Shown here one piece after another: positions 6,587 to 28,758 of a stretch of 64,000 nt of DNA. Position numbers and translations under genes: made by a program. Under the pieces are notes generated by a model. It saw only the letters and a program-made list of their open reading frames with translations. It had not been told where the DNA came from and searched no databases. The stretch comes from Okamejei kenojei (taxonomy: Eukaryota). The stretch spans positions 50,220,001 through 50,284,000 of the forward strand of contig CM069148.1 in NCBI GenBank assembly GCA_035221665.1, written 5' to 3'. Positions within the stretch are counted from its first letter, which is position 1. The number at the start of each line of letters is the position of its first letter.

Positions 6587-6677
6587 CTTCCTGTTTTCCT
6601 GCACTTTGATTTTCCCAGATTCTCTTTTTCCATTTTACCTTCATCAAGACTTCTTATGGTGACATCTGAATCCGGCG
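6587..6677 (-). CDS. 30-aa repeat exon type B, unit 1 (91 nt, +1 indel)
   Basis: ttaatacag|CGCCGG...CAGGAAG|gtaatg, with an extra base in a homopolymer. Confidence 0.5.
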
Positions 6678-6896
6678 CTGTATTAAAACACAAGCAAGGT
6701 GACAAAAACTGAACATGAATGCGTGGAATTCCAAAACATAAAAATTCCACATTTGTGTGAGTATTGACTGAATATTGTATATAATATTTGCAGGGATTAA
6801 CTAAATATAAATCATGTACAGTCTGCAGACAATGGCTGGACTTCAAATGTCACAGAAAGGCCAACAATACTCTGGATGCTTTGAGAAATGCCTTAC

Positions 6897-6985
6897 CTTC
6901 ACTTGCTCCTGCATTTTGGGTATCCTGCCTCTCTGTCTCCTGTTCACCTTCATCACAACTCCTGTGGCAGCGTCTGACTTGGGCT
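6897..6985 (-). CDS. 30-aa repeat exon type C, unit 1 (89 nt, -1 indel)
   Basis: tttaaatgcag|AGCCC...AGTGAAG|gtaagg, with one base missing from a homopolymer. Confidence 0.5.
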
Positions 6986-7309
6986 CTGCATTTAAACAAA
7001 AGAAAGTCTCTCAGATGTGATAATGGCAACACTACCTGAGACAAGGTATGTGAGAAGCTGGATCACACCTCGAGGAACACTATTATTCTTCCCCACAGTG
7101 AAGCCTTCATCTGCCGAAGGGATCTGTATCTCACTCCTGCAGAAAATACCTTCAACTCCTCTTCACTTTGAACCACATTTGTCTTTTGACTTTAGAGACA
7201 CAGCCCTTTGGCCCACCGAGTCCGCGCCGACCAGTGATTCACCCTGTACACTAACGCTATCCTACACATTAATGACTATTTACAATTTTTACCAAAATGC
7301 AAATTAGGA

Positions 7310-7566
7310 GTGGCACGATGGAGCAGTGGACAAGTTGTTGCCTTACAGCGCGCAGTGAGCCTGGATCGATTCTGACTATAAATGCTTTCTGTATGGAGTT
7401 TTGTACGTTCTCCCCCCGTGACCGCGTGGGTTTTCTCCAGCTGCTCTGGTTTGCTCCCGTACTCCAAAGACGTACAGGTTGGAGGTTAATTGGCTTTGGT
7501 ACAAATTGTCCCTGATGTGTAGGATAGTGCTATGTGTGGGGATCACTGGTCGGCCACGGACTGGGG
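7310..7566 (+). mobile_element. HE1-like V-SINE (also present in units 2-5 at about 12771, 18208, 23634, 29079)
   Basis: tRNA-like head gtggcacgatggagcagtgg followed by the V-domain-like core ggagtttgtacgttctcccc gtgaccgcgtgggttttctcc...tccaaagacgtacaggtt. Confidence 0.7.
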
Positions 7567-8362
7567 TAGCCTAGAATACAAGAGATATTGTGGTTGTAGC
7601 AGGAGAAAAGGAGTGGACCAGGAAGAAGCGCTGGGATCACATGACTCCCTGGAGGAGCATCGGGATGTAGGAATTACTTCAGAAGGAAATTGGAACGACT
7701 AAGAGAAAGCATGAGATCGCTTTGGCTGAGAAGATTAAGGAGAATGCAACAAGTTTTCATAGGTTATATGAAGGGGAATAGAGAATTGGATTAGTAAAGG
7801 ATGCAGAATTAGCCTGAAGTTTCATAAGTTGTGGGAGCAGAATTAGGCCATTCAGCCTATCAGATGCAGAGAGAGTGAAAGATGCAAGGAACTGTAGATG
7901 CTGGTTTACAAAAATATGGACACAAAGTGGTGGAGTAAGTGATTCAAGTAGCAGTTGTGGAAAACACGGATAGGTAATCTTTTGGGTTGGGACCTTTTTT
8001 TGAACTAGAGACCCTGTCTAGTGGTGTGCCTTCCCATTGCTGTTTGTTATCAAGATATAGGGTCTGTTTCCACACTGTATCTATGACTGTGACTATGACT
8101 ATGTGCTGTGCGGGTTTTATACACAGAGGGTGGTGGGTGACTGGGACTCGCTGCCAATGGGGTGGTGGTGGAGGCAGATACGATAATGACGTTTAAGAGA
8201 CTTCTGCATAGACACACGGATATGCTGGGAATATAGGGATATGGGTAATGTGCAGGAAGATAAGTGATGGTCTTGGCATCATGTTCAGCACAGATATTGT
8301 GGGCTGATGGGCCTGTTCCTGTGCTGTATGCTCTATGTTCTATGTTTCCGCAAAAGCATTAC

Positions 8363-8453
8363 CTTCCTGTTTTACTGCACGTGGATTTTCCAGTTTCCTT
8401 GCTTGATTTTTTATGCTCATCGGGACTTCCTGTGGTGACATCTGAATCCGGCG
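8363..8453 (-). CDS. 30-aa repeat exon type A, unit 2 (91 nt, +1 indel)
   Basis: ttaatacag|CGCCGG...CAGGAAG|gtaatg. Confidence 0.5.
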
Positions 8454-8806
8454 CTGTATTAAAATACAAGAAGGTCTCACATGTAATGATGCCAACGCTG
8501 CCTGAGATAAGGTATCCCAACACTTTCGTGAAGCTGGATCACAGGACTCGAACTTTTGTAGTTTCCCACCAATATTTAAAGAGCACAAAAGAGAAGCCTA
8601 AACCTGACTAAAGATCTACATGTTGCTGCTGCAAAAGTTACGTACAATTGTTATTTAGTTAAATACATCACTATTGACATCAAATTTCATCTGATCCGTA
8701 CCTGCTGTAAGCCAAATGTTTAATGGACTTCAGAATGAACGAAACAATTCGGCAAGTGCAACTTAGAGTCATAGACTCATAGAGCGATACAGCGTGGAAA
8801 CAGGCC

Positions 8807-10629
8807 AGATGTCCTGCTCGACCAGCTTCATGAGACCATTCATGACCTTCTCTTTCAGGGCTACTAGTACCGGCTTTGCAGAACACTGTGATGGGGTCAC
8901 ATCCTCTGTCCTAGTTACCAACTTGACCTTGCCAGGCAGCCTCCCACGTCTTTCGTCATCAAAGACATCTTTGTATCTCTTGAGTAATGAGCCAGCCTCA
9001 CTAACAGCATTCAGGCTCTTGAAGTTCTCATAGTGAACGTGATGAGTTTCACCTGTGGTGTAGCTTTGCCGCTCAGGAGCGGTGTGAGCCAGCCTTCCTC
9101 TACCACTATGTAGTGAACACGGTACTTCTTGTTCGTCTCGTTCCGGAGTATGACTTTGGTCCTACCTTGCGCCAGCAGGTTGGATCTGTTGTACATCTTT
9201 AAGATGATTTTCTCTCATCTAATGTCCTCTTTGTTGGGTACAAGATCCTTGGGTATCACATTAACACTGGCACCAGAGTCAATTTGAAATTTGATGGGTG
9301 CTGTGCCGACCTGCATCTCAGCGAATAGGCCTGAAGAGGAATTGCTTCCAGCTGCATTGATCTCAATGCAACTCACAGACTCTGTCGGAAGTGGGCGTGT
9401 CAGATGTCTCTATACGACCTTGTGCAGACACCGTTTCTGCGAGCTCTCCTTCCTCTACTTGCAGCAGCAGGCGAAGTGGTTTTGACGTCCGCATCTGTTG
9501 CAGACCTTCCCATATGCTGGGCATTCCTCCTTCCTATGCTTGTGCATCCTTGCACAAAACTTACACTTGACTAGTCCCTGATTCTTCCTCTGCAAAGGAA
9601 AATCAATCACCTTTCCCCTCGGTTTGAATCGTTCCACCTTGTGTATTGTCGGCTCTTCGCCGATGACCTGCATTCTTGCTGCTGTTACCTCCGAGGATCT
9701 ACATATGTCCACAGTTCCCTGCAGTGTCAGATTCCTCTTCTGAAGGAGTGTCTTCCTAGTTGACTGGTCCTCAATACCAATGACGATGCGATCTCAAATG
9801 AGCCTTTCTCTCAGGCAATCACAGAAGTTGCATTGTTTTAGCAAGCTCCTTCAGCTCTGCAACTCATGATTTATTGCTTTCCCCCTGATTTCTGGTCTCG
9901 TTTATTGATAATGAATCTTTCATACGTTTCATTCGTCTCTCCTATGATTGATGGTTGACATCTTGTCGATGATGACTTTCACATCCGTCTCATCTGTTAC
10001 CGTTTTGAATGTCAGGGTATTGATGATTCACACACCTTCTGGCCCAACAGAATGCAGGAATACTGCTTTTTGATACTGTTTCTCTTTCTTATCCACTTCT
10101 ATTATCACTTCATAATTGTCATGCATTCGTTTAAAACATTTTCCACTCTTCCACCCTGTTCTCTTTTGAGCTTTTTGGAGCCACGTGGAAAAGATGGACT
10201 GGTCTGCGCCCATTTTGAACTATCAGCATATTCCCTCTTCTTAATAGCTTATTTTATCTTTAAGCAGTCTCCCACAGCACGTCATTTTACACTTCGACTC
10301 CCACAGCACTGATTTACACGCAGCGTCTTATCTTTGTGTGTTCACTGACCAGCATCCACTCATGCATGCAGCTAGTCCGGTCACTGAGTGTTGAAACACT
10401 GAAACACAAATCTTCACTTTCACTGCTGCCACCATATTTTGATATTTGTCTGCTTACAAAATAAGTAAACTAGCATATTAATATACAGAGAAAGATGGTT
10501 GCACACACACTCATGTTGGGATCAAAAGCAGGTATGATTTATTTCCAAGTCAAGGGTCACTGACTGACTTACTGAGCATTTGCGATAATGAGTACAGCTC
10601 ATACGCATAATTAAATGGATATTGTCACA
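8807..10629 (-). mobile_element. Ty3/Gypsy fragment, unit 2
   Basis: Copy of 3367-5178. Confidence 0.85.
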
Positions 10630-12052
10630 ATATCCCTCCAAACCTGTCCATGTACCTGTCGAACAGTTTCTTAAATTTTGTGATAGTCCCCATCTTCACT
10701 ACCCTCCTCTGGCAGCTTGTTCCATACAGCCACTACCCTCTGTGTAAAAATGTTATCTCTCAGATCTTTTCCCTTTCACCTTAAACCTATGTCCTCTGGT
10801 TCTCGATTCACCTAATCTGGGCAAGAGACTCTGTGCATCTACCCGATTTATTCCTCTCATGATCCTATACACCTCTGTAAGATCACTCCTGCACTTCAAG
10901 GAATAGGAGTACTCAACCTCTCCCTGTAGCTCACACCCTCTAGTCCTGGCAACATCCTCTAAATCTTCTCTGCACCCTTTCCAGCTTGTCAACATATTTC
11001 CTGTAACATGGTGCTAGAACTGAGCACAGTATACCAAATGCGGTCGCACCAATGTCTTATACAACTGCATCATGACCCTCCGCAACTTATACACTCAATA
11101 CCCTGGCTGATGAAGGCCAATGTGCCAAAAGTATTTTTTGACCACCCAACCTACCTGCGAACACTTTGAATGAACTAAGCACCCTGCACTCCTAGATCCT
11201 TCTGCTCCACAACACTGTCCCCAGGGCCCTACCATTCACTGTGTAGGTCCTGCCCACATTAGACTTCCCAAAAAGCAACACCTCACATTTCTCTGCATTA
11301 AATTCCATCAATCAATCTTTAAGCCCATCGGGACAATCGATCAAGATTCTGCTGCAATTTTTCACAACCTACTTCACCATCTGCAAAACCACCCACTTTT
11401 GTATCATCTGCAAAGTTGTGAATCTTGCCAAGTTTTCATCCAAATCACTTTTGTGAGTCTGTGGAATTCACTGCCTCAGGGCGATGGAGGCCATGGATAC
11501 TTTCACGAGAGAGCTAGATAGGCCTCTTAAAGTTAGCAGAGTCAGAGATATGTGGAGAAGCAGGAACGGGGCACTGATTGTGGATGATCAGCCATGATCA
11601 CATTGAATGGCTTGAAGGGCCCGAATGGCCTCCTCCTGCACCTAGTGTCTATTGTCTACAGGCAGAAATACAATCAAGTCAAACTCAAGTACAATAGATG
11701 GAACAAAGGGGAAGATACTGAATGCAGAATATCGTTCTATACTGACAGGAAGAAAAATAAGATTTAAAAGATCTGTCCTTGCCGGGAGAACAAAGGAATG
11801 CAAAGGGCACAATGAGCAACAACTGAATTTGAATATGTGGTTTTCCACATAGAAAATCTGACATATATGTGAATTTTCCTGATAGGCATATAAAATTGAA
11901 ATTACGAATATGCTGGGAATGGAGGGATATGGGTTATGTGCAGAAAGCTAAATTGATGGTCTTGGCGTTACATTCAGCCCAGACATTGTGGGCTGAAGGG
12001 CCTGTTCCTGTGCTGTACTGTTCCATGTGCGATATTTCAGCAAAAGCATTAC

Positions 12053-12143
12053 CTTCCTGTTTTCCTGCACTTTGATTTTCCAGATTCTCTTTTTTCCATT
12101 TTACCTTCATCAAGACTTCTTATGGTGACATCTGAATCCGGCG
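12053..12143 (-). CDS. 30-aa repeat exon type B, unit 2 (91 nt, +1 indel)
   Basis: Splice sites intact; extra base in a homopolymer. Confidence 0.5.
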
Positions 12144-12358
12144 CTGTATTAAAACACAGCAAGGTGACAAAAACTGAACATGAATGCGTGGAATTCCAAA
12201 CATAAAATTCCACATTTGTGAGTATTGACCTGAATATTGTATATAATATTTGCAGGGATTAACTAAATATAAATCATGTACAGTCTGCAGACAATGGCTG
12301 GACTTCAAATGTCACAGAAAGGCCAACAATACTCTGGATGCTTTGAGAAATGCCTTAC

Positions 12359-12448
12359 CTTCACTTGCTCCTGCATTTTGGGTATCCTGCCTCTCTGTCT
12401 CCTGTTCACCTTCATCACAACTCCCTGTGGCAGCGTCTGACTTGGGCT
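12359..12448 (-). CDS. 30-aa repeat exon type C, unit 2 (90 nt)
   Basis: Phase 1-1; (E)PKSDAATGSCDEGEQETERQDTQNAGASE. Confidence 0.65.
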
Positions 12449-13813
12449 CTGCATTTAAACAAAAGAAAGTCTCTCAGATGTGATAATGGCAAACACTGCC
12501 TGAGACAAGGTATGTGAGAAGCTGGATCACACCTCGAGGAAACACTATTATTCTTCCCCACAGTGAAGCCTTCATCTGCCGAAGGATCTGTATCTCACTC
12601 CTGCAGAAAATACCTTCAACTCCTCTTCACTTTGAACCACATTTGTCTTTTGACTTTAGAGACACAGCCCTTTGGCCCACCGAGTCCGCGCCGACCAGTG
12701 ATCACCCTGTACACTAACGCTATCCTACACATTAATGACTATTTACAATTTTAACAAATGCAAATTAGGAGTGGCACGATGGAGCAGTGGACAAGTTGTT
12801 GCCTTACAGCGCCAGTGAGCCTGGATCGATTCTGACTATAAATGCTTTCTGTATGGAGTTTGTACGTTCTCCCCCGTGACCGCGTGGGTTTTCTCCAGCT
12901 GCTCTGGTTTGCTCCCGTACTCCAAAGACGTACAGGTTGGAGGTTAATTGGCTTTGGTACAAATTGTCCCTGATGTGTAGGATAGTGCTATGTGTGGGGA
13001 TCACTGGTCGGCACGGACTGGGGTAGCCTAGAATACAAGAGATATTGTGGTTGTAGCAGGAGAAAAGGAGTGGACCAGGAAGAAGCGCTGGGATCACATG
13101 ACTCCCTGGAGGAGCATCGGGATGTAGGAATTACTTCAGAAGGAAATTGGAACGACTAAGAGAAAGCATGAGATCGCTTTGGCTGAGAAGATTAAGGAGA
13201 ATGCAACAAGTTTTCATAGGTATATGAAGGGGAATAGAGAATTGGATTAGTAAAGGATGCAGAATTAGCCTGAAGTTCATAAGTTGTGGGAGCAGAATTA
13301 GGCCATTCAGCCTATCAGATGCAGAGAGTGAAAGATGCAAGGAACTGTAGATGCTGGTTTACAAAAATATTGGACACAAAGTGGTGGAGTAAGTGATTCA
13401 AGTAGCAGTTGTGGAAAACACGGATAGGTAATCTTTTGGGTTGGGACCTTTTTTGAACTAGAGACCCTGTCTAGTGGTGTGCCTCCCATTGCTGTTTGTT
13501 ATCAAGGTATAGGGTCTGTTTCCACACTGTACTATGACTGTGACTATGACTATGTGCTGTGCGGGTTTTATACACAGAGGGTGGTGGGGTGACTGGGACT
13601 CGCTGCCAGGGTGGTGGTGGAGGCAGATACGATAATGACGTTTAAGAGACTTCTGCATAGACACACGGATATGCTGGGAAAATATAGGGATGGGTAATGT
13701 GCAGGAAGATAAGTGATGGTCTTGGCATCATGTTCAGCACAGATATTGTGGGCTGAAGGGCCTGTTCCTTCGCTGTACTGCTCTATGTTTCTATGTTTCC
13801 GCAAAAGCATTAC

Positions 13814-13904
13814 CTTCCTGTTTTACTGCACGTGGATTTTCCAGTTTCCTTGCTTGATTTTTATGCTCATTCGGGACTTCCTGTGGTGACACCTGAATCC
13901 GGCG
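13814..13904 (-). CDS. 30-aa repeat exon type A, unit 3 (91 nt, +1 indel)
   Basis: Splice sites intact; one duplicated base. Confidence 0.5.
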
Positions 13905-14258
13905 CTGTATTAAAATACAAGAAGGTCTCACATGTAATGATGCCAACGCTGCCTGAGATAAGGTATCCCAACACTTTCGGGAAGCTGGATCACAGGACTC
14001 GAACTTTTGTAGTTTCCCACCAATATTTTAAGAGCACAAAAGAGAAGCCTTAACCTGACTAAAGATCTAACATGTTGCTGCTGCAAAAAGTTACGTACAA
14101 TTGTTATTTAGTTAAATACATCACTATTGACATCAAATTTCATCTGATCCGTACCTGCTGTAAGCCAAATGTTTAATGGACTTCAGAATGAACGAAACAA
14201 TTCGGCAAGTGCACTTAGAGTCATAGACTCATAGAGCGATACAGCGTGGAAACAGGCC

Positions 14259-16078
14259 AGATGTCCTGCTCGACCAGCTTCATGAGACCATTCATGACCT
14301 TCTCTTTCAGGGCTACTAGTACCGGCTTTGCAGAACACTGTGATGGGGTCACATCCTCTGTCCTAGTTACCAACTTGACCTTGCCAGGCAGCCTCCCACG
14401 TCTTTTCGTCATCAAAGACATCTTTGTATCTCTTGAGTAATGAGCCAGCCTCACTAACAGCATTCAGGCTCTTTGAAGTTCTCATAGTGAACGTGATGAG
14501 TTTTCACCTGTGGTGTAGCTTTGCCGCTCAGGAGCGGTGTGAGCCAGCCTTCCTCTACCACTATGTAGTGAACACGGGTACTTCTTGTTCGTCTCGTTCC
14601 GGAGTATGACTTTGGTCCTACCTTGCGCCAGCAGGTTGGATCTGTTGTACATCTTTAAGATGATTTTCTCTCATCTAATGTCCTCTTTGTTGGGTACAAG
14701 ATCCTTGGGTATCACATTTAACACTGGCACCAGAGTCAATTTGAAATTTGATGGGTGCTGTGCCGACCTGCATCTCAGCGAATAGGCCTGAAGAGGAATT
14801 GCTTCCAGCTGCATTGATCTCAATGCAACTCACAGACTCTGTCGGAAGTGGGCGTGTCAGATGTCTCTACGACCTTGTGCAGACACCGTTTCTGCGAGCT
14901 CTCCTTCCTCTACTTGCAGCAGCAGGCGAAGTGGTTTTGACGTCCGCATCTGTTGCAGACCTTCCCATATGCTGGGCATTCCTCCTTCCTATGCTTGTGC
15001 ATCCTTGCACAAAACTTACACTTGACTAGTCCCTGATTCTTCCTCTGCAAAGGAAAATCAATCACCTTTCCCCTCGGTTTGAATCGTTCCACCTTGTGTA
15101 TTGTCGGCTCTTCGCCGATGACCTGCATTCTTGCTGCTGTTACCTCCGAGGATCTACATATGTCCACAGTTCCCTGCAGTGGTCAGATTCCTCTTCTGAA
15201 GGAGTGTCTTCCTAGTTGACTGGTCCTCAATACCAATGACGATGCGATCTCAAATGAGCCTTTCTCTCAGGCAATCACAGAAGTTGCATGTTTTAGCAAG
15301 CTCCTTCAGCTCTGCAACTCATGATTTATTGCTTTCCCCTGATTTCTGGTCTCGTTTATTGATAATGAATCTTTCATACGTTTCATTCGTCTCTCCTATG
15401 ATGATGGTTGACATCTTGTCGATGATGACTTTCACATCCGTCTCATCTGTTACCGTTTTGAATGTCAGGGTATTGATGATTCACACACCTTCTGGCCCAA
15501 CAGAATGCAGGAATACTGCTTTTTGATACTGTTTCTCTTTCTTATCCACTTCTATTATCACTTCATAATTGTCATGCATTCGTTTAAACATTTTCCACTC
15601 TTCCACCCTGTTCTCTTTGAGCTTTTTGGAGCCACGTGGAAAGATGGACTGGTCTGCGCCATTTTGAACTATCAGCATATTCCCTCTCTCTTAATAGCTT
15701 ATTTTATCTTTAAGCAGTCTCCCACAGCACGTCATTTTACACTTCGACTCCCACAGCACTGATTTACACGCAGCGTCTTATCTTTGTGTGTTCACTGACC
15801 AGCATCCACTCATGCATGCAGCTAGTCCGGTCACTGAGTGTTGAAACACTGAAACACAAATCTTCACTTTCACTGCTGCCACCATATTTTGATATTTGTC
15901 TGCTTACAAAATAAGTAAACTAGCATATAATATACAGAGAAAGATGGTTGCACACACACTCATGTTGGGATCAAAAGCAGGTATGATTTATTTCCAAGTC
16001 AAGGGTCACTGACTGACTTACTGAGCATTTGCGATAATGAGTACAGCTCATACGCATAATTAAATGGATATTGTCACA
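14259..16078 (-). mobile_element. Ty3/Gypsy fragment, unit 3
   Basis: Copy of 3367-5178. Confidence 0.85.
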
Positions 16079-17490
16079 ATATCCCTCCAACCTGTCCATG
16101 TACCTGTCGAACAGTTTCTTAAATTTTGTGATAGTCCCCATCTTCACTACCTCCTCTGGCAGCTTGTTCCATACAGCCACTACCCTCTGTGTAAAAATGT
16201 TATCTCTCAGATCTTTTCCCTTTCACCTTAAACCTATGTCCTCTGGTTCTCGATTCACCTAATCTGGGCAAGAGACTCTGTGCATCTACCCGATTTATTC
16301 CTCTCATGATCCTATACACCTCTGTAAGATCACTCCTGCACTTCAAGGAATAGGAGTACTCAACCTCTCCCTGTAGCTCACACCCTCTAGTCCTGGCAAC
16401 ATCCTCTAAATCTTCTCTGCACCCTTTCCAGCTTGTCAACATATTTCCTGTAACATGGTGCTAGAACTGAGCACAGTATACCAAATGCGGTCGCACCAAT
16501 GTCTTATACAACTGCATCATGACCTCGCAACTTATACACTCAATACCCTGGCTGATGAAGGCCAATGTGCCAAAAGTATTTTTGACCACCCAACCTACCT
16601 GCGACCACTTTGAATGAACTAAGCACCTGCACTCCTAGATCCTTCTGCTCCACAACACTCCCCAGGGCCCTACCATTCACTGTGTAGGTCCTGCCCACAT
16701 TAGACTTCCCAAAAAGCAACACCTCACATTTCTCTGCATTAAATTCCATCAATCAATCTTTAGCCCATCGGGACAATCGATCAAGATTCTGCTGCAATTT
16801 TTCACAACCTACTTCACCATCTGCAAAACCACCCACTTTTGTATCATCTGCAAAGTTGTGAATCTTGCCAAGTTTTCATCCAAATCACTTTTGTGAGTCT
16901 GTGGAATTCACTGCCTCAGGGCGATGGAGGCCATGGATACTTTCACGAGAGAGCTAGATAGGCCTCTTAAAGTTAGCAGAGTCAGAGATATGTGGAGAAG
17001 CAGGAACGGGGCACTGATTGTGGATGATCAGCCATGATCACATTGAATGGCTTGAAGGGCCGAATGGCCTCCTCCTGCACCTAGTGTCTATTGTCTACCA
17101 GGCAGAAATACAATCAAGTCAAACTCAAGTACAATAGATGGAACAAAGGGGAAGATACTGAATGCAGAATATCGTTCTATACTGACAGGAAGAAAATAAG
17201 ATTTAAAAGATCTGTCCTTGCCGGGAGAACAAAGGAATGCAAAGGGCACAATGAGCAACAACTGAATTTGAATATGTGGTTTTCCACATAGAAAATCTGA
17301 CATATATGTGAATTTTCCTGATAGGCATATAAAATTGAAATTACGAATATGCTGGGAATGGAGGGATATGGGTTATGTGCAGAAAGCTAATTGATGGTCT
17401 TGGCGTTACATTCAGCCCAGACATTGTGGGCTGAAGGGCCTGTTCCTGTGCTGTACTGTTCCATGTGCGATATTTCAGCAAAAGCATTAC

Positions 17491-17581
17491 CTTCCTGTTT
17501 TCCTGCACTTTGATTTTCCAGATTCTCTTTTTCCATTTTACCTTCATCAAGACTTCTTATGGTGACATCTGAATCCGGGCG
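17491..17581 (-). CDS. 30-aa repeat exon type B, unit 3 (91 nt, +1 indel)
   Basis: Splice sites intact; extra base in a homopolymer. Confidence 0.5.
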
Positions 17582-17797
17582 CTGTATTAAAAACACAGCA
17601 AGGTGACAAAAACTGAACATGAATGCGTGGAATTCCAAACATAAAATTCCACATTTGTGAGTATTGACCTGAATATTGTATATAATATTTGCAGGGATTA
17701 ACTAAATATAAATCATGTACAGTCTGCAGACAATGGCTGGACTTCAAATGTCACAGAAAGGCCAACAATACTCTGGATGCTTTGAGAAATGCCTTAC

Positions 17798-17887
17798 CTT
17801 CACTTGCTCCTGCATTTTGGGTATCCTGCCTCTCTGTCTCCTGTTCACCTTCATCACAACTCCCTGTGGCAGCGTCTGACTTGGGCT
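17798..17887 (-). CDS. 30-aa repeat exon type C, unit 3 (90 nt)
   Basis: Phase 1-1, open frame. Confidence 0.65.
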
Positions 17888-19248: not shown

Positions 19249-19338
19249 CTTCCTGTTTTACTGCACGTGGATTTTCCAGTTTCCTTGCTTGATTTTTATG
19301 CTCATCGGGACTTCCTGTGGTGACACCTGAATCCGGCG
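19249..19338 (-). CDS. 30-aa repeat exon type A, unit 4 (90 nt)
   Basis: (A)PDSGVTTGSPDEHKNQARKLENPRAVKQE, flanked by cag| and |gtaatg. Confidence 0.7.
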
Positions 19339-19690
19339 CTGTATTAAAATACAAGAAGGTCTCACATGTAATGATGCCAACGCTGCCTGAGATAAGGTAT
19401 CCCAACACTTTCGGGAAGCTGGATCACAGGACTCGAACTTTTGTAGTTTCCCACCAATATTTTAAGAGCACAAAAGAGAAGCCTTAACCTGACTAAAGAT
19501 CTACATGTTGCTGCTGCAAAAGTTACGTACAATTGTTATTTAGTTAAATACATCACTATTGACATCAAATTTCATCTGATCCGTACCTGCTGTAAGCCAA
19601 ATGTTTAATGGACTTCAGAATGAACGAAACAATTCGGCAAGTGCACTTAGAGTCATAGACTCATAGAGCGATACAGCGTGGAAACAGGCC

Positions 19691-21505
19691 AGATGTCCTG
19701 CTCGACCAGCTTCATGAGACCATTCATGACCTTCTCTTTTCAGGGCTACTAGTACCGGCTTTGCAGAACACTGTGATGGGGTCACATCCTCTGTCCTAGT
19801 TACCAACTTGACCTTGCCAGGCAGCCTCCCACGTCTTTCGTCATCAAAGACATCTTTGTATCTCTTGAGTAATGAGCCAGCCTCACTAACAGCATTCAGG
19901 CTCTTGAAGTTCTCATAGTGAACGTGATGAGTTTCACCTGTGGTGTAGCTTTGCCGCTCAGGAGCGGTGTGAGCCAGCCTTCCTCTACCACTATGTAGTG
20001 AACACGGTACTTCTTGTTCGTCTCGTTCCGGAGTATGACTTTGGTCCTACCTTGCGCCAGCAGGTTGGATCTGTTGTACATCTTTAAGATGATTTTCTCT
20101 CATCTAATGTCCTCTTTGTTGGGTACAAGATCCTTGGGTATCACATTAACACTGGCACCAGAGTCAATTTGAAATTTGATGGGTGCTGTGCCGACCTGCA
20201 TCTCAGCGAATAGGCCTGAAGAGGAATTGCTTCCAGCTGCATTGATCTCAATGCAACTCACAGACTCTGTCGGAAGTGGGCGTGTCAGATGTCTCTACGA
20301 CCTTGTGCAGACACCGTTTCTGCGAGCTCTCCTTCCTCTACTTGCAGCAGCAGGCGAAGTGGTTTTGACGTCCGCATCTGTTGCAGACCTTCCCATATGC
20401 TGGGCATTCCTCCTTCCTATGCTTGTGAATCCTTGCACAGAACTTACACTTGACTAGTCCCTGATTCTTCCTCTGCAAAGGAAAATCAATCATCTTTCCC
20501 CTCGGTTTGAATCGTTCCACCTTGTGTATTGTCGGCTCTTCGCCGATGACCTGCATTCTTGCTGCTGTTACCTCCGAGGATCTACATATGTCCACAGTTC
20601 CCTGCAGTGTCAGATTCCTCTTCTGAAGGAGTGTCTTCCTAGTTGACTGGTCCTCAATACCAATGACGATGCGATCTCAAATGAGCCTTTCTCTCAGGCA
20701 ATCACAGAAGTTGCATGTTTTAGCAAGCTCCTTCAGCTCTGCAACTCATGATTTATTGCTTTCCCCTGATTTCTGGTCTCGTTTATTGATAATGAATCTT
20801 TCATACGTTTCATTCGTCTCTCCTATGATGATGGTTGACATCTTGTCGATGATGACTTTCACATCCGTCTCATCTGTTACCGTTTTGAATGTCAGGGTAT
20901 TGATGATTCACACACCTTCTGGCCCAACAGAATGCAGGAATACTGCTTTTTGATACTGTTTCTCTTTCTTATCCACTTCTATTATCACTTCATAATTGTC
21001 ATGCATTCGTTTAAACATTTTCCACTCTTCCATCCTGTTCTCTTTGAGCTTTTTGGAGCCACGTAGAAAGATGGACTGGTCTGCGCCATTTTGAACTATC
21101 AGCATATTCCCTCTCTCTTAATAGCTTATTTTATCTTTAAGCAGTCTCCCACAGCACGTCATTTTACACTTCGACTCCCACAGCACTGATTTACACGCAG
21201 CGTCTTATCTTTGTGTGTTCACTGACCAGCATCCACTCATGCATGCAGCTAGTCCGGTCACTGAGTGTTGAAACACTGAAACACAAATCTTCACTTTCAC
21301 TGCTGCCACCATATTTTGATATTTGTCTGCTTACAAAATAAGTAAACTAGCATATAATATACAGAGAAAGATGGTTGCACACACACTCATGTTGGGATCA
21401 AAAGCAGGTATGATTTATTTCCAAGTCAAGGGTCACTGACTGACTTACTGAGCATTTGCGATAATGAGTACAGCTCATACGCATAATTAAATGGATATTG
21501 TCACA
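19691..21505 (-). mobile_element. Ty3/Gypsy fragment, unit 4
   Basis: Copy of 3367-5178. Confidence 0.85.
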
Positions 21506-22918
21506 ATATCCCTCCAAACCTGTCCATGTACCTGTCGAAACAGTTTCTTAAATTTTGTGATAGTCCCCATCTTCACTACCTCCTCTGGCAGCTTGTTCCA
21601 TACAGCCACTACCCTCTGTGTAAAAATGTTATCTCTCAGATCTTTTCCCTTTCACCTTAAACCTATGTCCTCTGGTTCTCGATTCACCTAATCTGGGCAA
21701 GAGACTCTGTGCATCTACCCGATTTATTCCTCTCATGATCCTATACACCTCTGTAAGATCACTCCTGCACTTCAAGGAATAGGAGTACTCAACCTCTCCC
21801 TGTAGCTCACACCCTCTAGTCCTGGCAACATCCTCTAAATCTTCTCTGCACCCTTTCCAGCTTGTCAACATATTTCCTGTAACATGGTGCTAGAACTGAG
21901 CACAGTATACCAAATGCGGTCGCACCAATGTCTTATACAACTGCATCATGACCTCGCAACTTATACACTCAATACCCTGGCTGATGAAGGCCAATGTGCC
22001 AAAAGTATTTTTGACCACCCAACCTACCTGCGACCACTTTGAATGAACTAAGCACCTGCACTCCTAGATCCTTCTGCTCCACAACACTCCCCAGGGCCCT
22101 ACCATTCACTGTGTAGGTCCTGCCACATTAGACTTCCCAAAAAGCAACACCTCACATTTCTCTGCATTAAATTCCATCAATCAATCTCTAGCCCATCGGG
22201 ACAATCGATCAAGATTCTGCTGCAATTTTTCACAACCTACACCACCATCTGCAAAACCACCCACTTTTGTATCATCTGCAAAGTTGTGAATCTTGCCAAG
22301 TTTTCATCCAAATCACTTTTGTGAGTCTGTGGAATTCACTGCCTCAGGGCGATGGAGGCCATGGATACTTTCACGAGAGAGCTAGATAGGCCTCTTAAAG
22401 TTAGCAGAGTCAGAGATATGTGGAGAAGCAGGAACGGGGCACTGATTGTGGATGATCAGCCATGATCACATTGAATGGCTTGAAGGGCCGAATGGCCTCC
22501 TCCTGCACCTAGTGTCTATTGTCTACCAGGCAGAAATACAATCAAGTCAAACTCAAGTACAATAGATGGAACAAAGGGGAAGATACTGAATGCAGAATAT
22601 CGTTCTATACTGACAGGAAGAAAATAAGATTTAAAAGATCTGTACTTGCCGGGAGAACAAAGGAATGCAAAGGGCACAATGAGCAACAACTGAATTTGAA
22701 TATGTGGTTTTCCACATAGAAAATCTGACATATATGTGAATTTTCCTGATAGGCATATAAAATTGAAATTACGAATATGCTGGGAATGGAGGGATATGGG
22801 TTATGTGCAGAAAGCTAATTGATGGTCTTGGCGTTACATTCAGCCCAGACATTGTGGGCTGAAGGGCCTGTTCCTGTGCTGTACTGTTCCATGTGCGATA
22901 TTTCAGCAAAAGCATTAC

Positions 22919-23008
22919 CTTCCTGTTTTCCTGCACTTTGATTTTCCAGATTCTCTTTTTCCATTTTACCTTCATCAAGACTTCTTATGGTGACATCTGA
23001 ATCCGGCG
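22919..23008 (-). CDS. 30-aa repeat exon type B, unit 4 (90 nt)
   Basis: (A)PDSDVTIRSLDEGKMEKENLENQSAGKQE, flanked by cag| and |gtaatg. Confidence 0.7.
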
Positions 23009-23223
23009 CTGTATTAAAACACAGCAAGGTGACAAAAACTGAACATGAATGCGTGGAATTCCAAACATAAAATTCCACATTTGTGAGTATTGACCTGAAT
23101 ATTGTATATAATATTTGCAGGGATTAACTAAATATAAATCATGTACAGTCTGCAGACAATGGCTGGACTTCAAATGTCACAGAAAGGCCAACAATACTCT
23201 GGATGCTTTGAGAAATGCCTTAC

Positions 23224-23313
23224 CTTCACTTGCTCCTGCATTTTGGGTATCCTGCCTCTCTGTCTCCTGTTCACCTTCATCACAACTCCCTGTGGCAGCG
23301 TCTGACTTGGGCT
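23224..23313 (-). CDS. 30-aa repeat exon type C, unit 4 (90 nt)
   Basis: (E)PKSDAATGSCDEGEQETERQDTQNAGASE, flanked by cag| and |gtaagg. Confidence 0.7.
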
Positions 23314-24675
23314 CTGCATTTAAACAAAAGAAAGTCTCTCAGATGTGATAATGGCAACACTGCCTGAGACAAGGTATGTGAGAAGCTGGATCACACCTCG
23401 AGGAACACTATTATTCTTCCCCACAGTGAAGCCTTCATCTGCCGAAGGATCTGTATCTCACTCCTGCAGAAAATACCTTCAACTCCTCTTCACTTTGAAC
23501 CACATTTGTCTTTTGACTTTAGAGACACAGCCCTTTGGCCCACCGAGTCCGCGCCGACCAGTGATCACCCTGTACACTAACGCTATCCTACACATTAATG
23601 ACTATTTACAATTTTACCAAATGCAAATTAGGAGTGGCACGATGGAGCAGTGGACAAGTTGTTGCCTTACAGCGCCAGTGAGCCTGGATCGATTCTGACT
23701 ATAAATGCTTTCTGTATGGAGTTTGTACGTTCTCTCCCGTGACCGCGTGGGTTTTCTCCAGCTGCTCTGGTTTGCTCCCGTACTCCAAAGACGTACAGGT
23801 TGGAGGTTAATTGGCTTTGGTACAAATTGTCCCTGATGTGTAGGATAGTGCTATGTGTGGGGATCACTGGTCGGCACGGACTGGGGTAGCCTAGAATACA
23901 AGAGATATTGTGGTTGTAGCAGGAGAAAAGGAGTGGACCAGGAAGAAGCGCTGGGATCACATGACTCCCTGGAGGAGCATCGGGATGTAGGAATTACTTC
24001 AGAAGGAAATTGGAACGACTAAGAGAAAGCATGAGATCGCTTTGGCTGAGAAGATTAAGGAGAATGCAACAAGTTTTCATAGGTATATGAAGGGGAATAG
24101 AGAATTGGATTAGTAAAGGATGCAGAATTAGCCTGAAGTTCATAAGTTGTGGGAGCAGAATTAGGCCATTCAGCCTATCAGATGCAGAGAGTGAAAGATA
24201 CAAGGAACTGTAGATGCTGGTTTACAAAAATATGGACACAAAGTGGTGGAGTAAGTGATTCAAGTAGCAGTTGTGGAAAACACGGATAGGTAATCTTTTG
24301 GGGTGGGACCTTTTTTGAACTAGAGACCCTGTCTAGTGGTGTGCCTCCCATTGCTGTTTGTTATCAAGGTATAGGGTCTGTTTCCACACTGTATCTATGA
24401 CTGTGACTATGACTATGTGCTGTGCGGGTTTTATACACAGAGGGTGGTGGGTGACTGGGACTCGCTGCCAGGGGTGGTGGTGGAGGCAGATACGATAATG
24501 ACGTTTAAGAGACTTCTGCATAGACACACGGATATGCTGGGAATATAGGGATATGGGTAATGTGCAGGAAGATAAGTGATGGTCTTGGCATCATGTTCAG
24601 CACAGATATTGTGGGCTGAAGGGCCTGTTCCTGTGCTGTACTGCTCTATGTTCTATGTTTCCGCAAAAGCATTAC

Positions 24676-24765
24676 CTTCCTGTTTTACTGCACGTGGATT
24701 TTCCAGTTTCCTTGCTTGATTTTTATGCTCATCGGGACTTCCTGTGGTGACATCTGAATCCGGCG
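24676..24765 (-). CDS. 30-aa repeat exon type A, unit 5 (90 nt)
   Basis: (A)PDSDVTTGSPDEHKNQARKLENPRAVKQE, flanked by cag| and |gtaatg. Confidence 0.7.
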
Positions 24766-25117
24766 CTGTATTAAAATACAAGAAGGTCTCACATGTAATG
24801 ATGCCAACGCTGCCTGAGATAAGGTATCCCAACACTTTCGGGAAGCTGGATCACAGGACTCGAACTTTTGTAGTTTCCCACCAATATTTTAAGAGCACAA
24901 AAGAGAAGCCTTAACCTGACTAAAGATCTACATGTTGCTGCTGCAAAAGTTACGTACAATTGTTATTTAGTTAAATACATCACTATTGACATCAAATTTC
25001 ATCTGATCCGTACCTGCTGTAAGCCAAATGTTTAATGGACTTCAGAATGAACGAAACAATTCGGCAAGTGCACTTAGAGTCATAGACTCATAGAGCGATA
25101 CAGCGTGGAAACAGGCC

Positions 25118-26933
25118 AGATGTCCTGCTCGACCAGCTTCATGAGACCATTCATGACCTTCTCTTTCAGGGCTACTGGTACCGGCTTTGCAGAACACTGT
25201 GATGGGGTCACATCCTCTGTCCTAGTTACCAACTTGACCTTGCCAGGCAGCCTCCCACGTCTTTCGTCATCAAAGACATCTTTGTATCTCTTGATTAATG
25301 AGCCAGCCTCACTAACAGCATTCAGGCTCTTGAAGTTCTCATAGTGAACGTGATGAGTTTCACCTGTGGTGTAGCTTTGCCGCTCAGGAGCGGTGTGAGC
25401 CAGCCGTCCTCTACCACTATGTAGTGAACACGGTACTTCTTGTTGTTCGTCTCGTTCCGGAGTATGACTTTGGTCCCCTTGCGCCAGCAGGTTGGATCTG
25501 TTGTACATCTTTAAGATGATTTTGTCTCATCTAATGTCCTCTTTGTTGGGTACAAGATCCTTGGGAATCACATTAACACTGGCACCAGAGTCAATTTGAA
25601 ATTTGATGGGTGCTGTGCCAACCTGCATCTCAGCGAATAGGCCTGAAGAGGAATTGCTTCCAGCTGCATTGATCTCAATGTAACTCACAGACTCTGTCGG
25701 AAGTGGGCGTGTCAGATGTCTCTACGACCTTGTGCAGACACCGTTTCTGCGAGCTCTCCTTCCTCTACTTGCAGTAGCAGGCGAAGTGGTTTTGACGTCC
25801 GCATCTGTTGCAGACCTTCCCATATACTGGGCATTCCTCCTTCCTACGCTTGTGCATCCTTGCACAGAACCTACACTTGACTAGTCCCTGATTCTTCCTC
25901 TGCAAAGGAAAATCAATCATCTTTCCCCTCGGTTTTAATCGTTCCACCTTGTGTATTGTCGGTTCTTCGCCGATGACCTGCATTCTTGCCGCTGTTACCT
26001 CCGAGGATCTACATATGTCCACAGTCCCCTGCAGTGTCAGATTCCTCTTCTGAAGGAGTGTCTTCCTAGTTGACTGGTCCTGAATACCAATGACGATGCG
26101 ATCTCAAATGAGCCTTTCTCTCAGGCAATCACAGAAGTTGCATGTTTTAGCAAGCTCCTTCAGCTCTGCAACTCATGATTTATTGCTTTCCCCTGATTTC
26201 TGGTCTCGTTTATTGAAAATGAATCTTTCATACGTTTCATTCGTCTCTCCTATGATGATGGTTGACATCTTGTCGATGATGACTTTCACATCCGTCTCAT
26301 CTGTTACCGTTTTGAATGTCAGGGTATTGATGATTCACACACCTTCTGGCCCAACAGAATGCAGGAATACTGCTTTTTGATACTGTTTCTCTTTCTTATC
26401 CACTTCTATTATCACTTCATAATTGTCATGCATTCGTTTAAACATTTTCCACTCTTCCACCCTGTTCTCTTTGAGCTTTTTGCAGCCACGTGGAAAGATG
26501 GACTGGTCTGCGCCATTTTGAACTATCAGCATATTCCTTTTCTCTTAATAGCTTATTTCATCTTTAAGCAGTCTCCCACAGCACGTCATTTTACACTTCG
26601 ACTCCCACAGCACTGATTTACACGCAGCGTCTTATCTTTGTGTGTTCACTGACCAGCATCCACTCATGCATGCAGCTAGTCCGGTCACTGAGTGTTGAAA
26701 CACTGAAACACAAATCTTCACTTTCACTGCTGCCACCATATTTTGATATTTGTCTGCTTACAAAATAAGTAAACTAGCATATAATATACAGAGAAAGATG
26801 GCTGCACACACACTCATGTTGGGATCAAAAGCAGGTATGATTTATTTCCAAGTCAAGGGTCACTGACTGACTTACTGAGCATTTGCGATAATGAGTACAG
26901 CTCATACGCATAAATTAAATGGATATTGTCACA
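25118..26933 (-). mobile_element. Ty3/Gypsy fragment, unit 5
   Basis: Copy of 3367-5178. Confidence 0.85.
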
Positions 26934-28362
26934 ATATCCCTCCAAACCTGTCCATGTACCTGTCGAACAGTTTCTTAAATTTTGTGATAGTCCCCATCTT
27001 CACTACCTCCTCTGGCAGCTTGTTCCATACAGCCACTACCCTCTGTGTAAAAATGTTATCTCTCAGATCTTTTCCCTTTCACCTTAAACCTATGTCCTCT
27101 GGTTCTCGATACACCTAATCTGGGCAAGAGACTCTGTGCATCTACCCGATTTATTCCTCTCATGATCCTATACACCTCTGTAAGATCACCCATCATCCTC
27201 CTGCACTTCAAGGAATAGGAGTACTCAACCTCTCCCTGTAGCTCACACCCTCTAGTCCTGGCAACATCCTCTAAATCTTCTCTGCACCCTTTCCAGCTTG
27301 TCAACATATTTCCTGTAACATGGTGCTAGAACTGAGCACAGTACACCAAATGTGGTCGCACCAATGTCTTATACAACTGCATCATGACATCGCAACTTAT
27401 ACACTCAATACCCTGGCTGATGAAGGCCAATGTGCCAAAAGTATTTTGACCACCCAACCTACCTGCGACCACTTTGAATGAACTAAGCACCTGCACTCCT
27501 AGATCCTTCTGCTCCACAACACTCCCCAGAGCCCTACCATTCACTGTGTAGGTCCTGCCACATTAGACTTCCCAAAAAGCAACACCTCACATTTCTCTGC
27601 ATTAAATTCCATCAATCAATCTTTAGCCCATCGGAACAATCGATCAAGATTCTGCTGCAATTTTTCACAACCTACTTCACCATCTGCAAAACCACCCACA
27701 TTTGTATCATCTGCAAAGTTGTGAATCTTGCCATCTAAGTTTTCATCCAAATCACTTTTGTGAGTCTGTGGAATTCACTGCCTCAGGGCGATGGAGGCCA
27801 TGGATACTTTCAAGAGAGAGCTAGATAGGCCTCTTAAAGTTAGCAGTCAGAGATATGTGGAGAAGCAGGAACGGGGCACTGATTGTGGATGATCAGCCAT
27901 GATCACATTGAATGGCTTGAAGGGCCGAATGGCCTCCTCTTGCACCTAGTGTCTATTGTCTACCAGGCAGAAATACAATCAAGTCAAACTCAAGTACAAT
28001 AGATGGAACAAAGGGGAAGATACCGAATGCAGAATATCGTTCTATACTGACAGGAAGAAAATAAGATTTAAAAGATCTGTACTTGCCGGGAGAACAAAGG
28101 AATGTAAAGGGCAAAGGGCACAATGAGCAACAACTGAATTTGAATATGTGGTTTTCCACATAGAAAATCTGACATATATGTGAATTTTCCTGATAGGCAT
28201 ATAAAATTGAAATTACGAATATGCTGGGAATGGAGGGATATGGGTTATGTGCAGAAAACTAATTGATGGTCTTGGCGTTACATTCAGCCCAGACATTGTG
28301 GGCTGAATGGCCTGTTCCTGTGCTGTACTGTTCCATGTGCGATATTTCAGCAAAAGCATTAC

Positions 28363-28452
28363 CTTCCTGTTTTCCTGCACTTTGATTTTCCAGATTCTCT
28401 TTTTCCATTTTACCTTCATCAAGACTTCTTATGGTGACATCTGAATCCGGCG
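28363..28452 (-). CDS. 30-aa repeat exon type B, unit 5 (90 nt)
   Basis: (A)PDSDVTIRSLDEGKMEKENLENQSAGKQE, flanked by cag| and |gtaatg. Confidence 0.7.
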
Positions 28453-28668
28453 CTGTATTAAAACACAGCAAGATGACAAAAACTGAACATGAATGCGTGG
28501 AATTCCAAACATAAAATTCCACATATGTGAGTATTGACCTGAATATTGTATATAATATATTTCAGGGATTAACTAAATATAAATCATGTACAGTCTGCAG
28601 ACAATGGCTGGACTTCAAATGTCACAGAAAGGCCAACAATACTCTGGATGCTTTGAGAAATGCCTTAC

Positions 28669-28758
28669 CTTCACTTGCTTCTGCATTTTGGGTATCCTGC
28701 CTCTCTGTCTCCTGTTCACCTTCATCACAACTCCCTGTGGCAGCGTCTGACTTGGGCA
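28669..28758 (-). CDS. 30-aa repeat exon type C, unit 5 (90 nt)
   Basis: (V)PKSDAATGSCDEGEQETERQDTQNAEASE, flanked by cag| and |gtaagg. Confidence 0.7.

What the first reader, a model, noticed from the sequence alone, without database searches (positions are those of the whole stretch)
6587..28758. A TE-laden 5.4-kb tandem array hides 14 symmetric 90-nt exons encoding a 30-aa repeat
Seen: each unit carries three minus-strand segments bounded by pyrimidine tract+CAG and G|GTAA. All are phase 1-1 and exactly 90 nt when intact. They are mutually homologous but diverged: A APDSDVTTGSPDEHKNQARKLENPRAVKQE, B APDSDVTIRSLDEGKMEKENLENQSAGKQE, C EPKSDAATGSCDEGEQETERQDTQNAGASE (consensus xPxSD....SxDE...A...E). 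Length, frame and splice sites are conserved between diverged types while their introns have decayed, which is the signature of real exons. Transcription order is (C-B-A)x4-C-B, up to about 420 aa. Inference: an acidic, probably disordered tail with a CK2-type SxDE site in every repeat, whose length could be tuned by copy number and by frame-preserving exon skipping.
Basis: partly seen in the sequence, partly recalled or inferred. Interest (0 to 1): 0.9.

Follow-up and report, generated by a model that had tools for sequence, protein, structure and literature searches.

The report
Repeat-exon acidic tail of skate B7-like gene
A 5.4-kb block repeated about five times carries fourteen 90-base exons that most likely encode the acidic, repetitive cytoplasmic tail of a B7-H6/B7-H3-like immune receptor in a skate; related skates have the same exons in annotated but uncharacterised genes.

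Summary
A 5.43-5.46 kb unit is repeated about 4.9 times (window 2982-29811). It carries 14 minus-strand 90-nt segments of three types, in the order (C-B-A)x4-C-B. Every segment has a pyrimidine tract, a CAG acceptor and a G|GTAA donor. Eight are exactly 90 nt; six carry a 1-nt indel.

Adjacent intron is as conserved as the exons, and dN/dS is 0.7-2.3. External evidence supports real exons. A profile of the three peptides hits only two of 1.84 billion proteins, both RefSeq models from other skates. Both are built of the same exact 30-aa A/B/C units. The eight Leucoraja erinacea isoforms differ by whole 30-aa units. The Rhinoraja longicauda model places the repeats after V, C1 and a TM segment, so they are cytoplasmic.

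The window holds intact V, C1, TM and juxtamembrane exons of such a B7-H6/CD276-like gene. An Ig-like module exon upstream of the array is broken, by a lost acceptor and a DIRS insertion.

Verdict: real tail exons of an uncharacterised elasmobranch B7-like family. Whether this particular copy is used is unproven.

The parts
57090..57422 (-). IgV exon, 333 nt, phase 1-1, intact
   Evidence: Read directly. PDB sequence search: CD276 2.8e-20, NCR3LG1/B7-H6 3.2e-12. Pfam V-set 1.7e-8.
53578..53892 (-). IgC1 exon, 315 nt, phase 1-1, intact
   Evidence: Pfam C1-set 1.3e-13. PDB: UrIg2 3.2e-13, B7-H6 1.7e-11.
50676..50777 (-). Transmembrane exon, 102 nt, phase 1-1, intact. A hydrophobic stretch is followed by WKKKCK.
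   Evidence: tblastn of P0002 residues 234-269, 69% identity. Sequence and splice sites read.
44262..44339 (-). Juxtamembrane cytoplasmic exon, 78 nt, phase 1-1, intact
   Evidence: tblastn of P0002 residues 266-292, 70% identity. Read.
43924..43996 (-). Remnant of an A/B-type repeat exon. Only the 3' half survives, 78-84% identical. The 5' half is replaced by SINE-like sequence and the donor GT is now TT.
29852..35031 (-). Module exon in two pieces, 35006-35031 and 29852-30248. Together they make 423 nt, phase 1-1. A DIRS-like element (30249-35005, its ORFs on the + strand) separates them. The expected acceptor AG reads AC at 35033-35032.
   Evidence: The 3' piece is 79% identical to P0002 residues 363-497. 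AF2 beta-sandwich pLDDT 81.5. Foldseek best hits are Ig V-set domains, E 5e-5.
2982..29811 (-). Tandem array of a 5.43-5.46 kb unit, about 4.9 copies. The last unit lacks the A exon (356-nt gap relative to other units, junction about 3252-3257).
28669..28758 (-). Exon C, copy 1, 90 nt, open. Two nonsynonymous differences from the other C copies.
28363..28452 (-). Exon B, copy 1, 90 nt, open
24676..24765 (-). Exon A, copy 1, 90 nt, open
23224..23313 (-). Exon C, copy 2, 90 nt, open
22919..23008 (-). Exon B, copy 2, 90 nt, open
19249..19338 (-). Exon A, copy 2, 90 nt, open (D5G)
17798..17887 (-). Exon C, copy 3, 90 nt, open
17491..17581 (-). Exon B, copy 3, 91 nt (+1 C in a C run), frame broken as assembled
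13814..13904 (-). Exon A, copy 3, 91 nt (+1 A), frame broken as assembled
12359..12448 (-). Exon C, copy 4, 90 nt, open
12053..12143 (-). Exon B, copy 4, 91 nt (+1 A in an A run), frame broken as assembled
8363..8453 (-). Exon A, copy 4, 91 nt (+1 A in an A run), frame broken as assembled
6897..6985 (-). Exon C, copy 5, 89 nt (-1 G in a G run), frame broken as assembled
6587..6677 (-). Exon B, copy 5, 91 nt (+1 G), frame broken as assembled

Best explanation
The 14 segments are cassette exons of the 3' part of a skate gene for a B7-family receptor related to B7-H6 and CD276.

Exon order on the minus strand: IgV, IgC1, transmembrane, a short juxtamembrane exon, an Ig-like module exon, then the repeat exons. 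Every one of these exons is phase 1-1, so any of them can be skipped or duplicated without changing the frame.

Each 90-nt exon adds 30 residues of acidic, low-hydropathy, Pro/Gly/Ser-containing sequence to the cytoplasmic tail. The three exon types A, B and C are old, because all three occur in three skate lineages. In this genome a 5.4-kb block holding one exon of each type, plus LINE/SINE fragments in its introns, was amplified recently. The units differ by only 0.3-1% substitutions.

Shown: the anatomy; homology to annotated coding exons; the position after the TM segment.

Inferred: that the tail is disordered; that its length varies by exon skipping and by copy number; that it is phosphorylated or acts as a charged scaffold or spacer; that the six 1-nt indels are assembly errors rather than mutations.
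For: - Specific homologues. The profile of A/B/C (A1) against 1.84e9 representative proteins gives two hits only: P0001, E 5.9e-127, 11 repeats; P0002, E 1.6e-82, 7 repeats. They are RefSeq XP_055505898.1 (Leucoraja erinacea) and XP_078271721.1 (Rhinoraja longicauda).
- Same units in relatives. All 19 repeats in these models are exactly 30 aa. Each falls into the window's type C (21-29/30 identical), B (20-21/30) or A (18-24/30).
- Isoforms. Leucoraja X1-X8 differ by whole 30-aa units and by a 38-aa and a 45-aa unit.
- Architecture. P0002 reads signal peptide, V, C1, TM, module, repeats. The window has the same exons in the same order, with V, C1, TM and juxtamembrane exons intact.
- Tail better conserved than ectodomain. 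Window versus P0002: V 40-43%, C1 32%; TM 69%, juxtamembrane 70%, module 79%, repeats 60-80%.
- Not a dispersed TE.
- Only the phase-1 frame is open in all three types, and there are no indels between types at 58-80% identity.
- Family-wide design. V-C1-TM relatives in many sharks and rays, 480-1083 aa, also carry acidic tandem-repeat tails.
- Composition is acidic and of the disordered type. In the AF2 model of P0002 the tail has no secondary structure and pLDDT 22-29 (that model is poor overall).
Against: - No RNA from this species. The reads tools returned only three small, probably DNA, contig runs of a related organism.
- Six of 14 exons are out of frame as assembled. Exon indels are as dense as intron indels: 6 seen, about 4 expected.
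- No codon-level purifying selection between types (dN/dS 2.3, 0.74, 0.90). Adjacent intron is equally conserved.
- The module exon just upstream has no AG acceptor and is split by a DIRS insertion.
- No leader exon and no terminal exon were found in the window.
- The RefSeq models are predictions, and their RNA support could not be inspected.
Confidence: 0.75

Rival explanations
1. The exons are homologous to real tail exons, but this copy is a dying or dead gene. The array would then be an untranslated or aberrantly spliced relic that was amplified neutrally together with its TEs.
For: - The module exon lacks its acceptor and carries a 4.8-kb DIRS insertion.
- Repeat remnant X at 43924-43996 has a broken donor.
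- Six of 14 repeat exons are frameshifted, at the same density as intron sequence.
- Exon A is deleted from the last unit.
- No leader or terminal exon was found.
- dN/dS is about 1 or more.
Against: - The V, C1, TM and juxtamembrane exons are intact with good splice sites.
- All exons are phase 1-1, so skipping the broken module keeps the frame.
- The indels are 1-nt, heavily insertion-biased, and rise from 3 to 44 per unit along otherwise 99% identical units. This looks technical rather than mutational.
- Leader and terminal exons may lie outside the window.
Confidence: 0.2
2. The 90-mers are parts of a dispersed transposable-element consensus and only mimic exons.
For: - Each A and B exon lies 22-25 nt from a SINE/LINE-like fragment.
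- The A-B downstream flank is 83-87% identical.
- A partial copy, X, sits 15 kb away.
Against: - Apart from X, no copy exists elsewhere in the 64-kb window, while the neighbouring TE pieces recur 2-7 times.
- In contigs of a related organism the TE pieces reach depth 10^3-10^5, while the C-exon bins are at 0 and the B2 bin at about 1-2.
- Of 1.84e9 proteins, only two skate receptor models match.
Confidence: 0.02
3. The repeats form an extracellular acidic stalk rather than a cytoplasmic tail, or belong to a separate downstream gene.
For: - The Leucoraja models start inside the module exon and lack V/C1/TM.
- An Ig-like fold after a TM segment is unusual.
Against: - The Rhinoraja model, and shark and ray relatives, join V-C1-TM to the module and acidic repeats in one protein with a single hydrophobic segment followed by basic residues.
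- The window has the same exon order and matching phases.
- The module keeps only one conserved Cys.
Confidence: 0.03

Closest known systems
RefSeq models LOC129705962 (Leucoraja erinacea, isoforms X1-X8) and LOC144602449 (Rhinoraja longicauda), both 'uncharacterized protein'
   Same: They carry the same three 30-aa repeat types with the same unit boundaries. The module sequence before the repeats matches (31/31 aligned residues, 93.5% identical to Leucoraja; 79% to Rhinoraja). The TM and juxtamembrane exons match those of the Rhinoraja model.
   Different: The window's repeats form a nearly homogeneous (C-B-A)x4-C-B array, whereas the relatives have diverged, irregular orders. The Leucoraja models add 38-aa and 45-aa units. 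The window's V/C1 is only 32-43% identical to that of the Rhinoraja model, so it is a divergent paralogue. The window's module exon is broken.
Human B7-H6 (NCR3LG1) and B7-H3 (CD276)
   Same: A V-C1 ectodomain followed by a TM segment. These are the best solved-structure sequence matches for the window's V exon (CD276 2.8e-20, B7-H6 3.2e-12), for its C1 exon (B7-H6 1.7e-11) and for the whole P0002 ectodomain (B7-H6 2.5e-23).
   Different: The matches cover the ectodomain only, and nothing in the PDB or Pfam matches the module. I do not recall a repeat-exon acidic tail or a post-TM Ig-like module in the human proteins; that is from memory and was not checked. Orthology, NKp30 binding and MHC linkage were not tested.
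Chicken BG genes (butyrophilin/B7 relatives)
   Same: An Ig-superfamily receptor whose long cytoplasmic tail is built from many short tandem exons. Size polymorphism comes from length variation in the repeat region, and retained intron sequence contributes coding sequence (PMC4046983).
   Different: BG exons are 21 nt and encode heptads thought to form a coiled coil. Here the exons are 90 nt and encode acidic 30-aa units with Pro and Gly and no heptad pattern, arranged in a 5.4-kb three-exon higher-order unit. The two tails share no sequence homology.
V-C1-TM relatives in sharks and rays (Mobula, Hemitrygon, Cetorhinus, Scyliorhinus, Chiloscyllium, Hemiscyllium, Stegostoma), auto-named 'neurofilament medium polypeptide-like', 'RP1L1', 'IWS1 homolog', 'dextranase-like'
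   Same: The same architecture: a B7-like V-C1, a TM segment, one to four copies of the about 135-aa module, and acidic tandem repeats, with many predicted isoforms.
   Different: Their repeat units have other lengths and sequences (about 26 aa in Mobula, about 40 aa in Hemiscyllium). The skate 30-aa profile does not detect them (best domain 5-8 bits).

Membership tests
B7 family, B7-H6/CD276-like V-C1 receptors | N-terminal IgV domain with B7-type sequence | tested here: met
   V exon versus PDB: CD276 2.8e-20, NCR3LG1 3.2e-12, PD-L1 about 1e-6. Pfam V-set.
B7 family, B7-H6/CD276-like V-C1 receptors | Membrane-proximal IgC1 domain followed by a single TM segment, with phase-1 introns | tested here: met
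   C1-set 1.3e-13 and B7-H6 1.7e-11. The TM exon 50676-50777 is intact. All exon lengths are multiples of 3 with phase-1 boundaries.
B7 family, B7-H6/CD276-like V-C1 receptors | Orthology to B7-H6 (NKp30 ligand, MHC-linked) or to CD276 | not testable with these tools
   No synteny or binding data. The window's V/C1 is about equally distant (32-45%) from all family members found.
Skate repeat-tail genes (LOC129705962 / LOC144602449) | Tandem 30-aa units of types A, B and C with a shared P2, S/T4, T8-G9-S10, E13, E30 pattern | tested here: met
   Profile hits E 5.9e-127 and 1.6e-82. Type assignment of 19 repeats. Column counts.
Skate repeat-tail genes (LOC129705962 / LOC144602449) | An about 140-aa module exon directly upstream of the repeats | tested here: met
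   Present at 29852-30248 plus 35006-35031, 79% identical to P0002. It is interrupted by a DIRS element and lacks the AG acceptor.
Skate repeat-tail genes (LOC129705962 / LOC144602449) | Repeat exons present in mature mRNA | not testable with these tools
There is only indirect support from the eight RefSeq isoforms of Leucoraja.
Chicken BG-type tails | 21-nt exons encoding heptad repeats (coiled coil) | tested here: not met
   The exons are 90 nt. The peptides contain Pro and Gly at fixed positions and show no heptad pattern. The BG description is from PMC4046983.
Dispersed transposable element | Many copies elsewhere with the same flanks | tested here: not met
   There is only remnant X outside the array. 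Depth in contigs of a relative is zero or very low, against 10^3-10^5 for the true TE pieces.
CK2 substrate sites | S/T-x-x-D/E in an acidic context | tested here: inconclusive
   There is one S-x-x-E per unit at S10: SPDE, SLDE, SCDE. S10 and E13 are kept in most repeats of the relatives. This is a motif match only. From general knowledge, Pro at +1 in type A disfavours CK2.

The most novel reading that the evidence does not exclude
Elasmobranchs have an undescribed branch of the B7 family. In it, a B7-H6/B7-H3-like ectodomain is coupled to a cytoplasmic, disulfide-free Ig-like module and to an acidic tail. The tail's length is set by the copy number of symmetric exons, and in transcripts by exon skipping. 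In this skate the tail array is being remodelled by recent 5.4-kb segmental amplification. That would make it a length-variable signalling or scaffolding tail, analogous to chicken BG tails but of independent origin.
Probability: 0.3. Interest if true: 0.7.

Novelty: new variant of a known kind. Interest (0 to 1): 0.55.

Why it matters
It ties an unannotated stretch to a receptor family that is present across sharks and rays but has no name or literature. Automatic names such as 'neurofilament medium-like' hide that these are B7-like receptors.

The design is a tail made of interchangeable phase 1-1 exons, sitting in a TE-rich and recently amplified array. This is a second, independent example, after chicken BG genes, of an Ig-superfamily immune gene whose cytoplasmic length can change by exon copy number and splicing. 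It gives comparative immunologists a concrete locus for studying how such tails evolve and what they bind.

Tried and rejected
- **RNA evidence.** The look-up of sequencing runs gave three small runs, share 0.06, probably DNA of a related organism. Read laying showed only TE pile-ups and a few 91-93% identical intron contigs, with no junctions.
- **Terminal exon.** tblastn with the C-termini of P0002 and P0006 found nothing convincing.
- **Leader exon.** A scan of 57.4-64 kb found nothing convincing.
- **First TM guess.** A hydrophobic ORF at about 51.7 kb was rejected because its frame does not fit phase 1. The true TM exon is at 50676-50777.
- **Pfam PH_29.** The hit in the Cetorhinus protein is a summed weak score. 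The fold search favours an Ig-like sandwich.
- **Reach of the 30-aa profile.** It does not detect ray or shark repeats, so homology of the repeat unit beyond skates is unproven.
- **Literature.** No description of this family or of these LOC numbers was found. Flajnik 2012 and Ohta 2015 are not held.
- **AF2 of whole P0002.** Too poor overall (mean pLDDT 40) to weigh the tail's low confidence heavily.
- **Joined model.** Exons were searched one by one by reference. The only whole-tail figure, net charge about -59 for 14 units, is arithmetic on the per-exon values.

Full report
**1. The observation**

The region is a tandem array. Direct-repeat families recur every 5426-5466 nt, and copies are 97-100% identical. 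BLAST of one unit against the rest of the window extends the array to about 2982-29811.

BLAST of the three exon types finds 14 copies on the minus strand: five C, five B and four A. It also finds one partial copy, X, at 43924-43996. Read out in register, all 14 have a pyrimidine tract, a CAG acceptor and an AAG|GTAAG or AAG|GTAAT donor.

- Eight copies are exactly 90 nt and open in phase 1-1.
- Six carry a single-base indel: B3, A3, B4, A4 and B5 have +1 nt, and C5 has -1 nt.
- A fifth A exon is absent because the last unit lacks the equivalent of 24647-25002.

**2. Is it more than chance, and is it a TE?**

Only the phase-1 frame is open in all three types.
- Column shuffles of the A/B/C alignment give an all-open given frame in 3% of trials.
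- Random substitution from B to the observed distances keeps the frame open in both other types in 15% of trials.

So the open frame alone is modest evidence.

- A versus B is 80% identical in the exon but 83-87% over the first 100 nt of downstream intron.
- A versus C is 58% in the exon and 60-74% over the first 100 nt upstream.
- dN/dS between types is 2.3, 0.74 and 0.90.

What does distinguish the exons is that there are no indels between types, and that all splice signals are retained.

The 90-mers are not dispersed repeats.
- The TE-like pieces of the unit (24371-24654, 26934-27341, 27760-27956, 28009-28338) recur 2-7 times elsewhere in the window. The exons recur only as X.
- In contigs of a related organism these TE pieces reach depths of 10^3-10^5. 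The bins with C exons have depth 0, and the B2 bin about 1-2.

**3. What the exons belong to**

A profile of the 30-aa units was scored against 1.84 billion representative proteins. It hit two proteins and nothing else: P0001 (E 5.9e-127, 11 repeats) and P0002 (E 1.6e-82, 7 repeats). These are RefSeq XP_055505898.1, LOC129705962 isoform X7 of Leucoraja erinacea, and XP_078271721.1, LOC144602449 of Rhinoraja longicauda.

All 19 repeats in these models are exactly 30 aa. Each is assignable to the window's C (21-29/30), B (20-21/30) or A (18-24/30) type. The three types therefore predate the split of these skates and have kept their length in every annotated copy.

P0002 reads signal peptide, IgV, IgC1, TM, a short linker, an about 140-aa module, then repeats. 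tblastn places the same parts on the window in the same order:

| Part | Window coordinates | Identity to P0002 |
|---|---|---|
| IgV | 57090-57422 | 40% |
| IgC1 | 53578-53892 | 32% |
| TM | 50676-50777 | 69% |
| Juxtamembrane exon | 44262-44339 | 70% |
| Module (3' piece) | 29852-30248 | 79% |
| Repeats | array | 60-80% |

The V, C1, TM and juxtamembrane exons are intact and phase 1-1.

The ectodomain is of the B7 type.
- The V exon matches CD276 (2.8e-20) and B7-H6 (3.2e-12).
- The C1 exon matches B7-H6 (1.7e-11).
- The whole P0002 ectodomain matches B7-H6 best (2.5e-23).

Because the repeats follow the single TM segment, they form a cytoplasmic tail.

**4. Exon skipping and family context**

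The eight Leucoraja isoforms (P0001, P0003-P0009) differ by removal of whole 30-aa units (X3, X4, X7, X8), of a 38-aa unit (X5, X7, X8) or of a 45-aa unit (X6). From general knowledge of NCBI's pipeline, alternative isoforms are issued when transcript alignments support them. I could not inspect that evidence, so this is indirect support for frame-preserving skipping.

A search with the P0002 ectodomain found about 54% identical V-C1-TM proteins in many sharks and rays. They are 480-1083 aa long and have many isoforms. Their automatic names, such as 'neurofilament medium polypeptide-like', 'RP1L1' and 'IWS1 homolog', reflect acidic repeats. Their sequences show the same plan: TM, one to four modules, and acidic tandem repeats with lineage-specific units. 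The skate profile does not detect those other repeats.

**5. State of this particular copy**

Units differ by 0.3-1% substitutions but by more 1-nt indels than substitutions. Private indels rise from 3 (unit 2) to 20, 44 and 17 (units 3 to 5). They are almost all insertions, and two thirds lie next to homopolymers. Six fall in exons, where about four are expected from the intron density. I read this as assembly noise in a near-identical array. That is an inference. It also means there is no sign of selection against exon indels.

The module exon is damaged.
- It is split by a DIRS-like element at 30249-35005.
- The two pieces together give 423 nt, in frame.
- The position where relatives imply a CAG acceptor reads CAC.

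All exons are phase 1-1, so skipping the module would still join the juxtamembrane exon to the repeats in frame.

No leader exon and no terminal exon were found in the window.

**6. Mechanism**

Each exon type is acidic (net -1, -4 and -7), of low hydropathy, and on the disordered side of the charge-hydropathy boundary. Each has one S-x-x-E site at the conserved S10. In the AF2 model of P0002 the TM helix and the module are structured, and the tail is coil with pLDDT 22-29. The whole model is poor, however.

The most likely reading is a flexible, negatively charged and possibly phosphorylated cytoplasmic extension. Its length would be set by exon number and exon choice. Function beyond that is inferred, not shown.

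**7. Comparison with known systems**

The closest functional analogue is the chicken BG family. Its long cytoplasmic tails are built from many 21-nt heptad exons and vary in length (PMC4046983). Here the exons are 90 nt, are not heptads, and are unrelated in sequence, so the resemblance is convergent.

No paper in the searched library describes these genes.

**8. Limits**

- The reads tools gave no RNA.
Exons were handled one by one by reference.

**Verdict**

The segments are real tail exons of an uncharacterised B7-like family, and their use in this copy is unproven. Confidence in the best explanation is 0.75.

Noticed in passing
window 29852-30248 and 35006-35031 (-), with insertion 30249-35005: The module exon upstream of the array folds as a beta sandwich (AF2 with 10 family sequences: pLDDT 81.5, pTM 0.75). 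Its best PDB fold matches are Ig V-set domains (E 5e-5, TMq 0.5-0.59). It keeps only one conserved Cys and lies after the TM exon. It is split by a DIRS-like element, and its expected acceptor AG reads AC at 35033-35032..
   Followed up: partly
window 43924-43996 (-): Remnant of an A/B-type repeat exon between the juxtamembrane exon and the module. The 5' half is replaced by SINE-like sequence and the donor GT is now TT.
   Followed up: yes
window 2982-23313 (array units 3 to 5): Single-base insertions rise steeply along otherwise 99% identical units: 3, 20, 44 and 17 private indels, with insertions far outnumbering deletions. This is probably unpolished long-read consensus inside the tandem array.
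   Followed up: partly
P0010-P0028 (sharks and rays): An elasmobranch-wide family of B7-like V-C1-TM proteins with post-TM modules and acidic repeats is annotated under misleading automatic names (neurofilament medium-like, RP1L1, IWS1 homolog, dextranase-like, obscurin-like). The Heterodontus and Pristiophorus relatives carry several C1-like Ig domains after the TM segment instead.
   Followed up: partly
P0006 residues 153-190; window 40384-40596, 61084-61209, 62107-62232: The 38-aa cassette unit in the Leucoraja isoforms matches LINE reverse-transcriptase regions of the window at 35-48% identity, which suggests an exonised TE fragment. The 45-aa unit resembles read-through from a repeat exon into its SINE-like downstream flank.
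   Followed up: no
window 57584-58059: A 28-nt, 56-nt and 153-nt nested tandem repeat (GGACCGGGAACACGTGAACACACGCCAC-like) lies just upstream of the V exon.
   Followed up: no
window 44587-44641; 49376-49765; 55046-55340: A run of 55 G lies about 250 nt upstream of the juxtamembrane exon (44262-44339). Two N gaps lie in the introns of the gene. The gaps were not filled or looked up.
   Followed up: no
window V/C1 exons versus TM/tail exons: The ectodomain is only 32-45% identical to every relative found. The TM, juxtamembrane and module exons are 69-79% identical to the Rhinoraja model. This suggests paralogues that share or homogenise their tails while the ectodomains diverge.
   Followed up: partly
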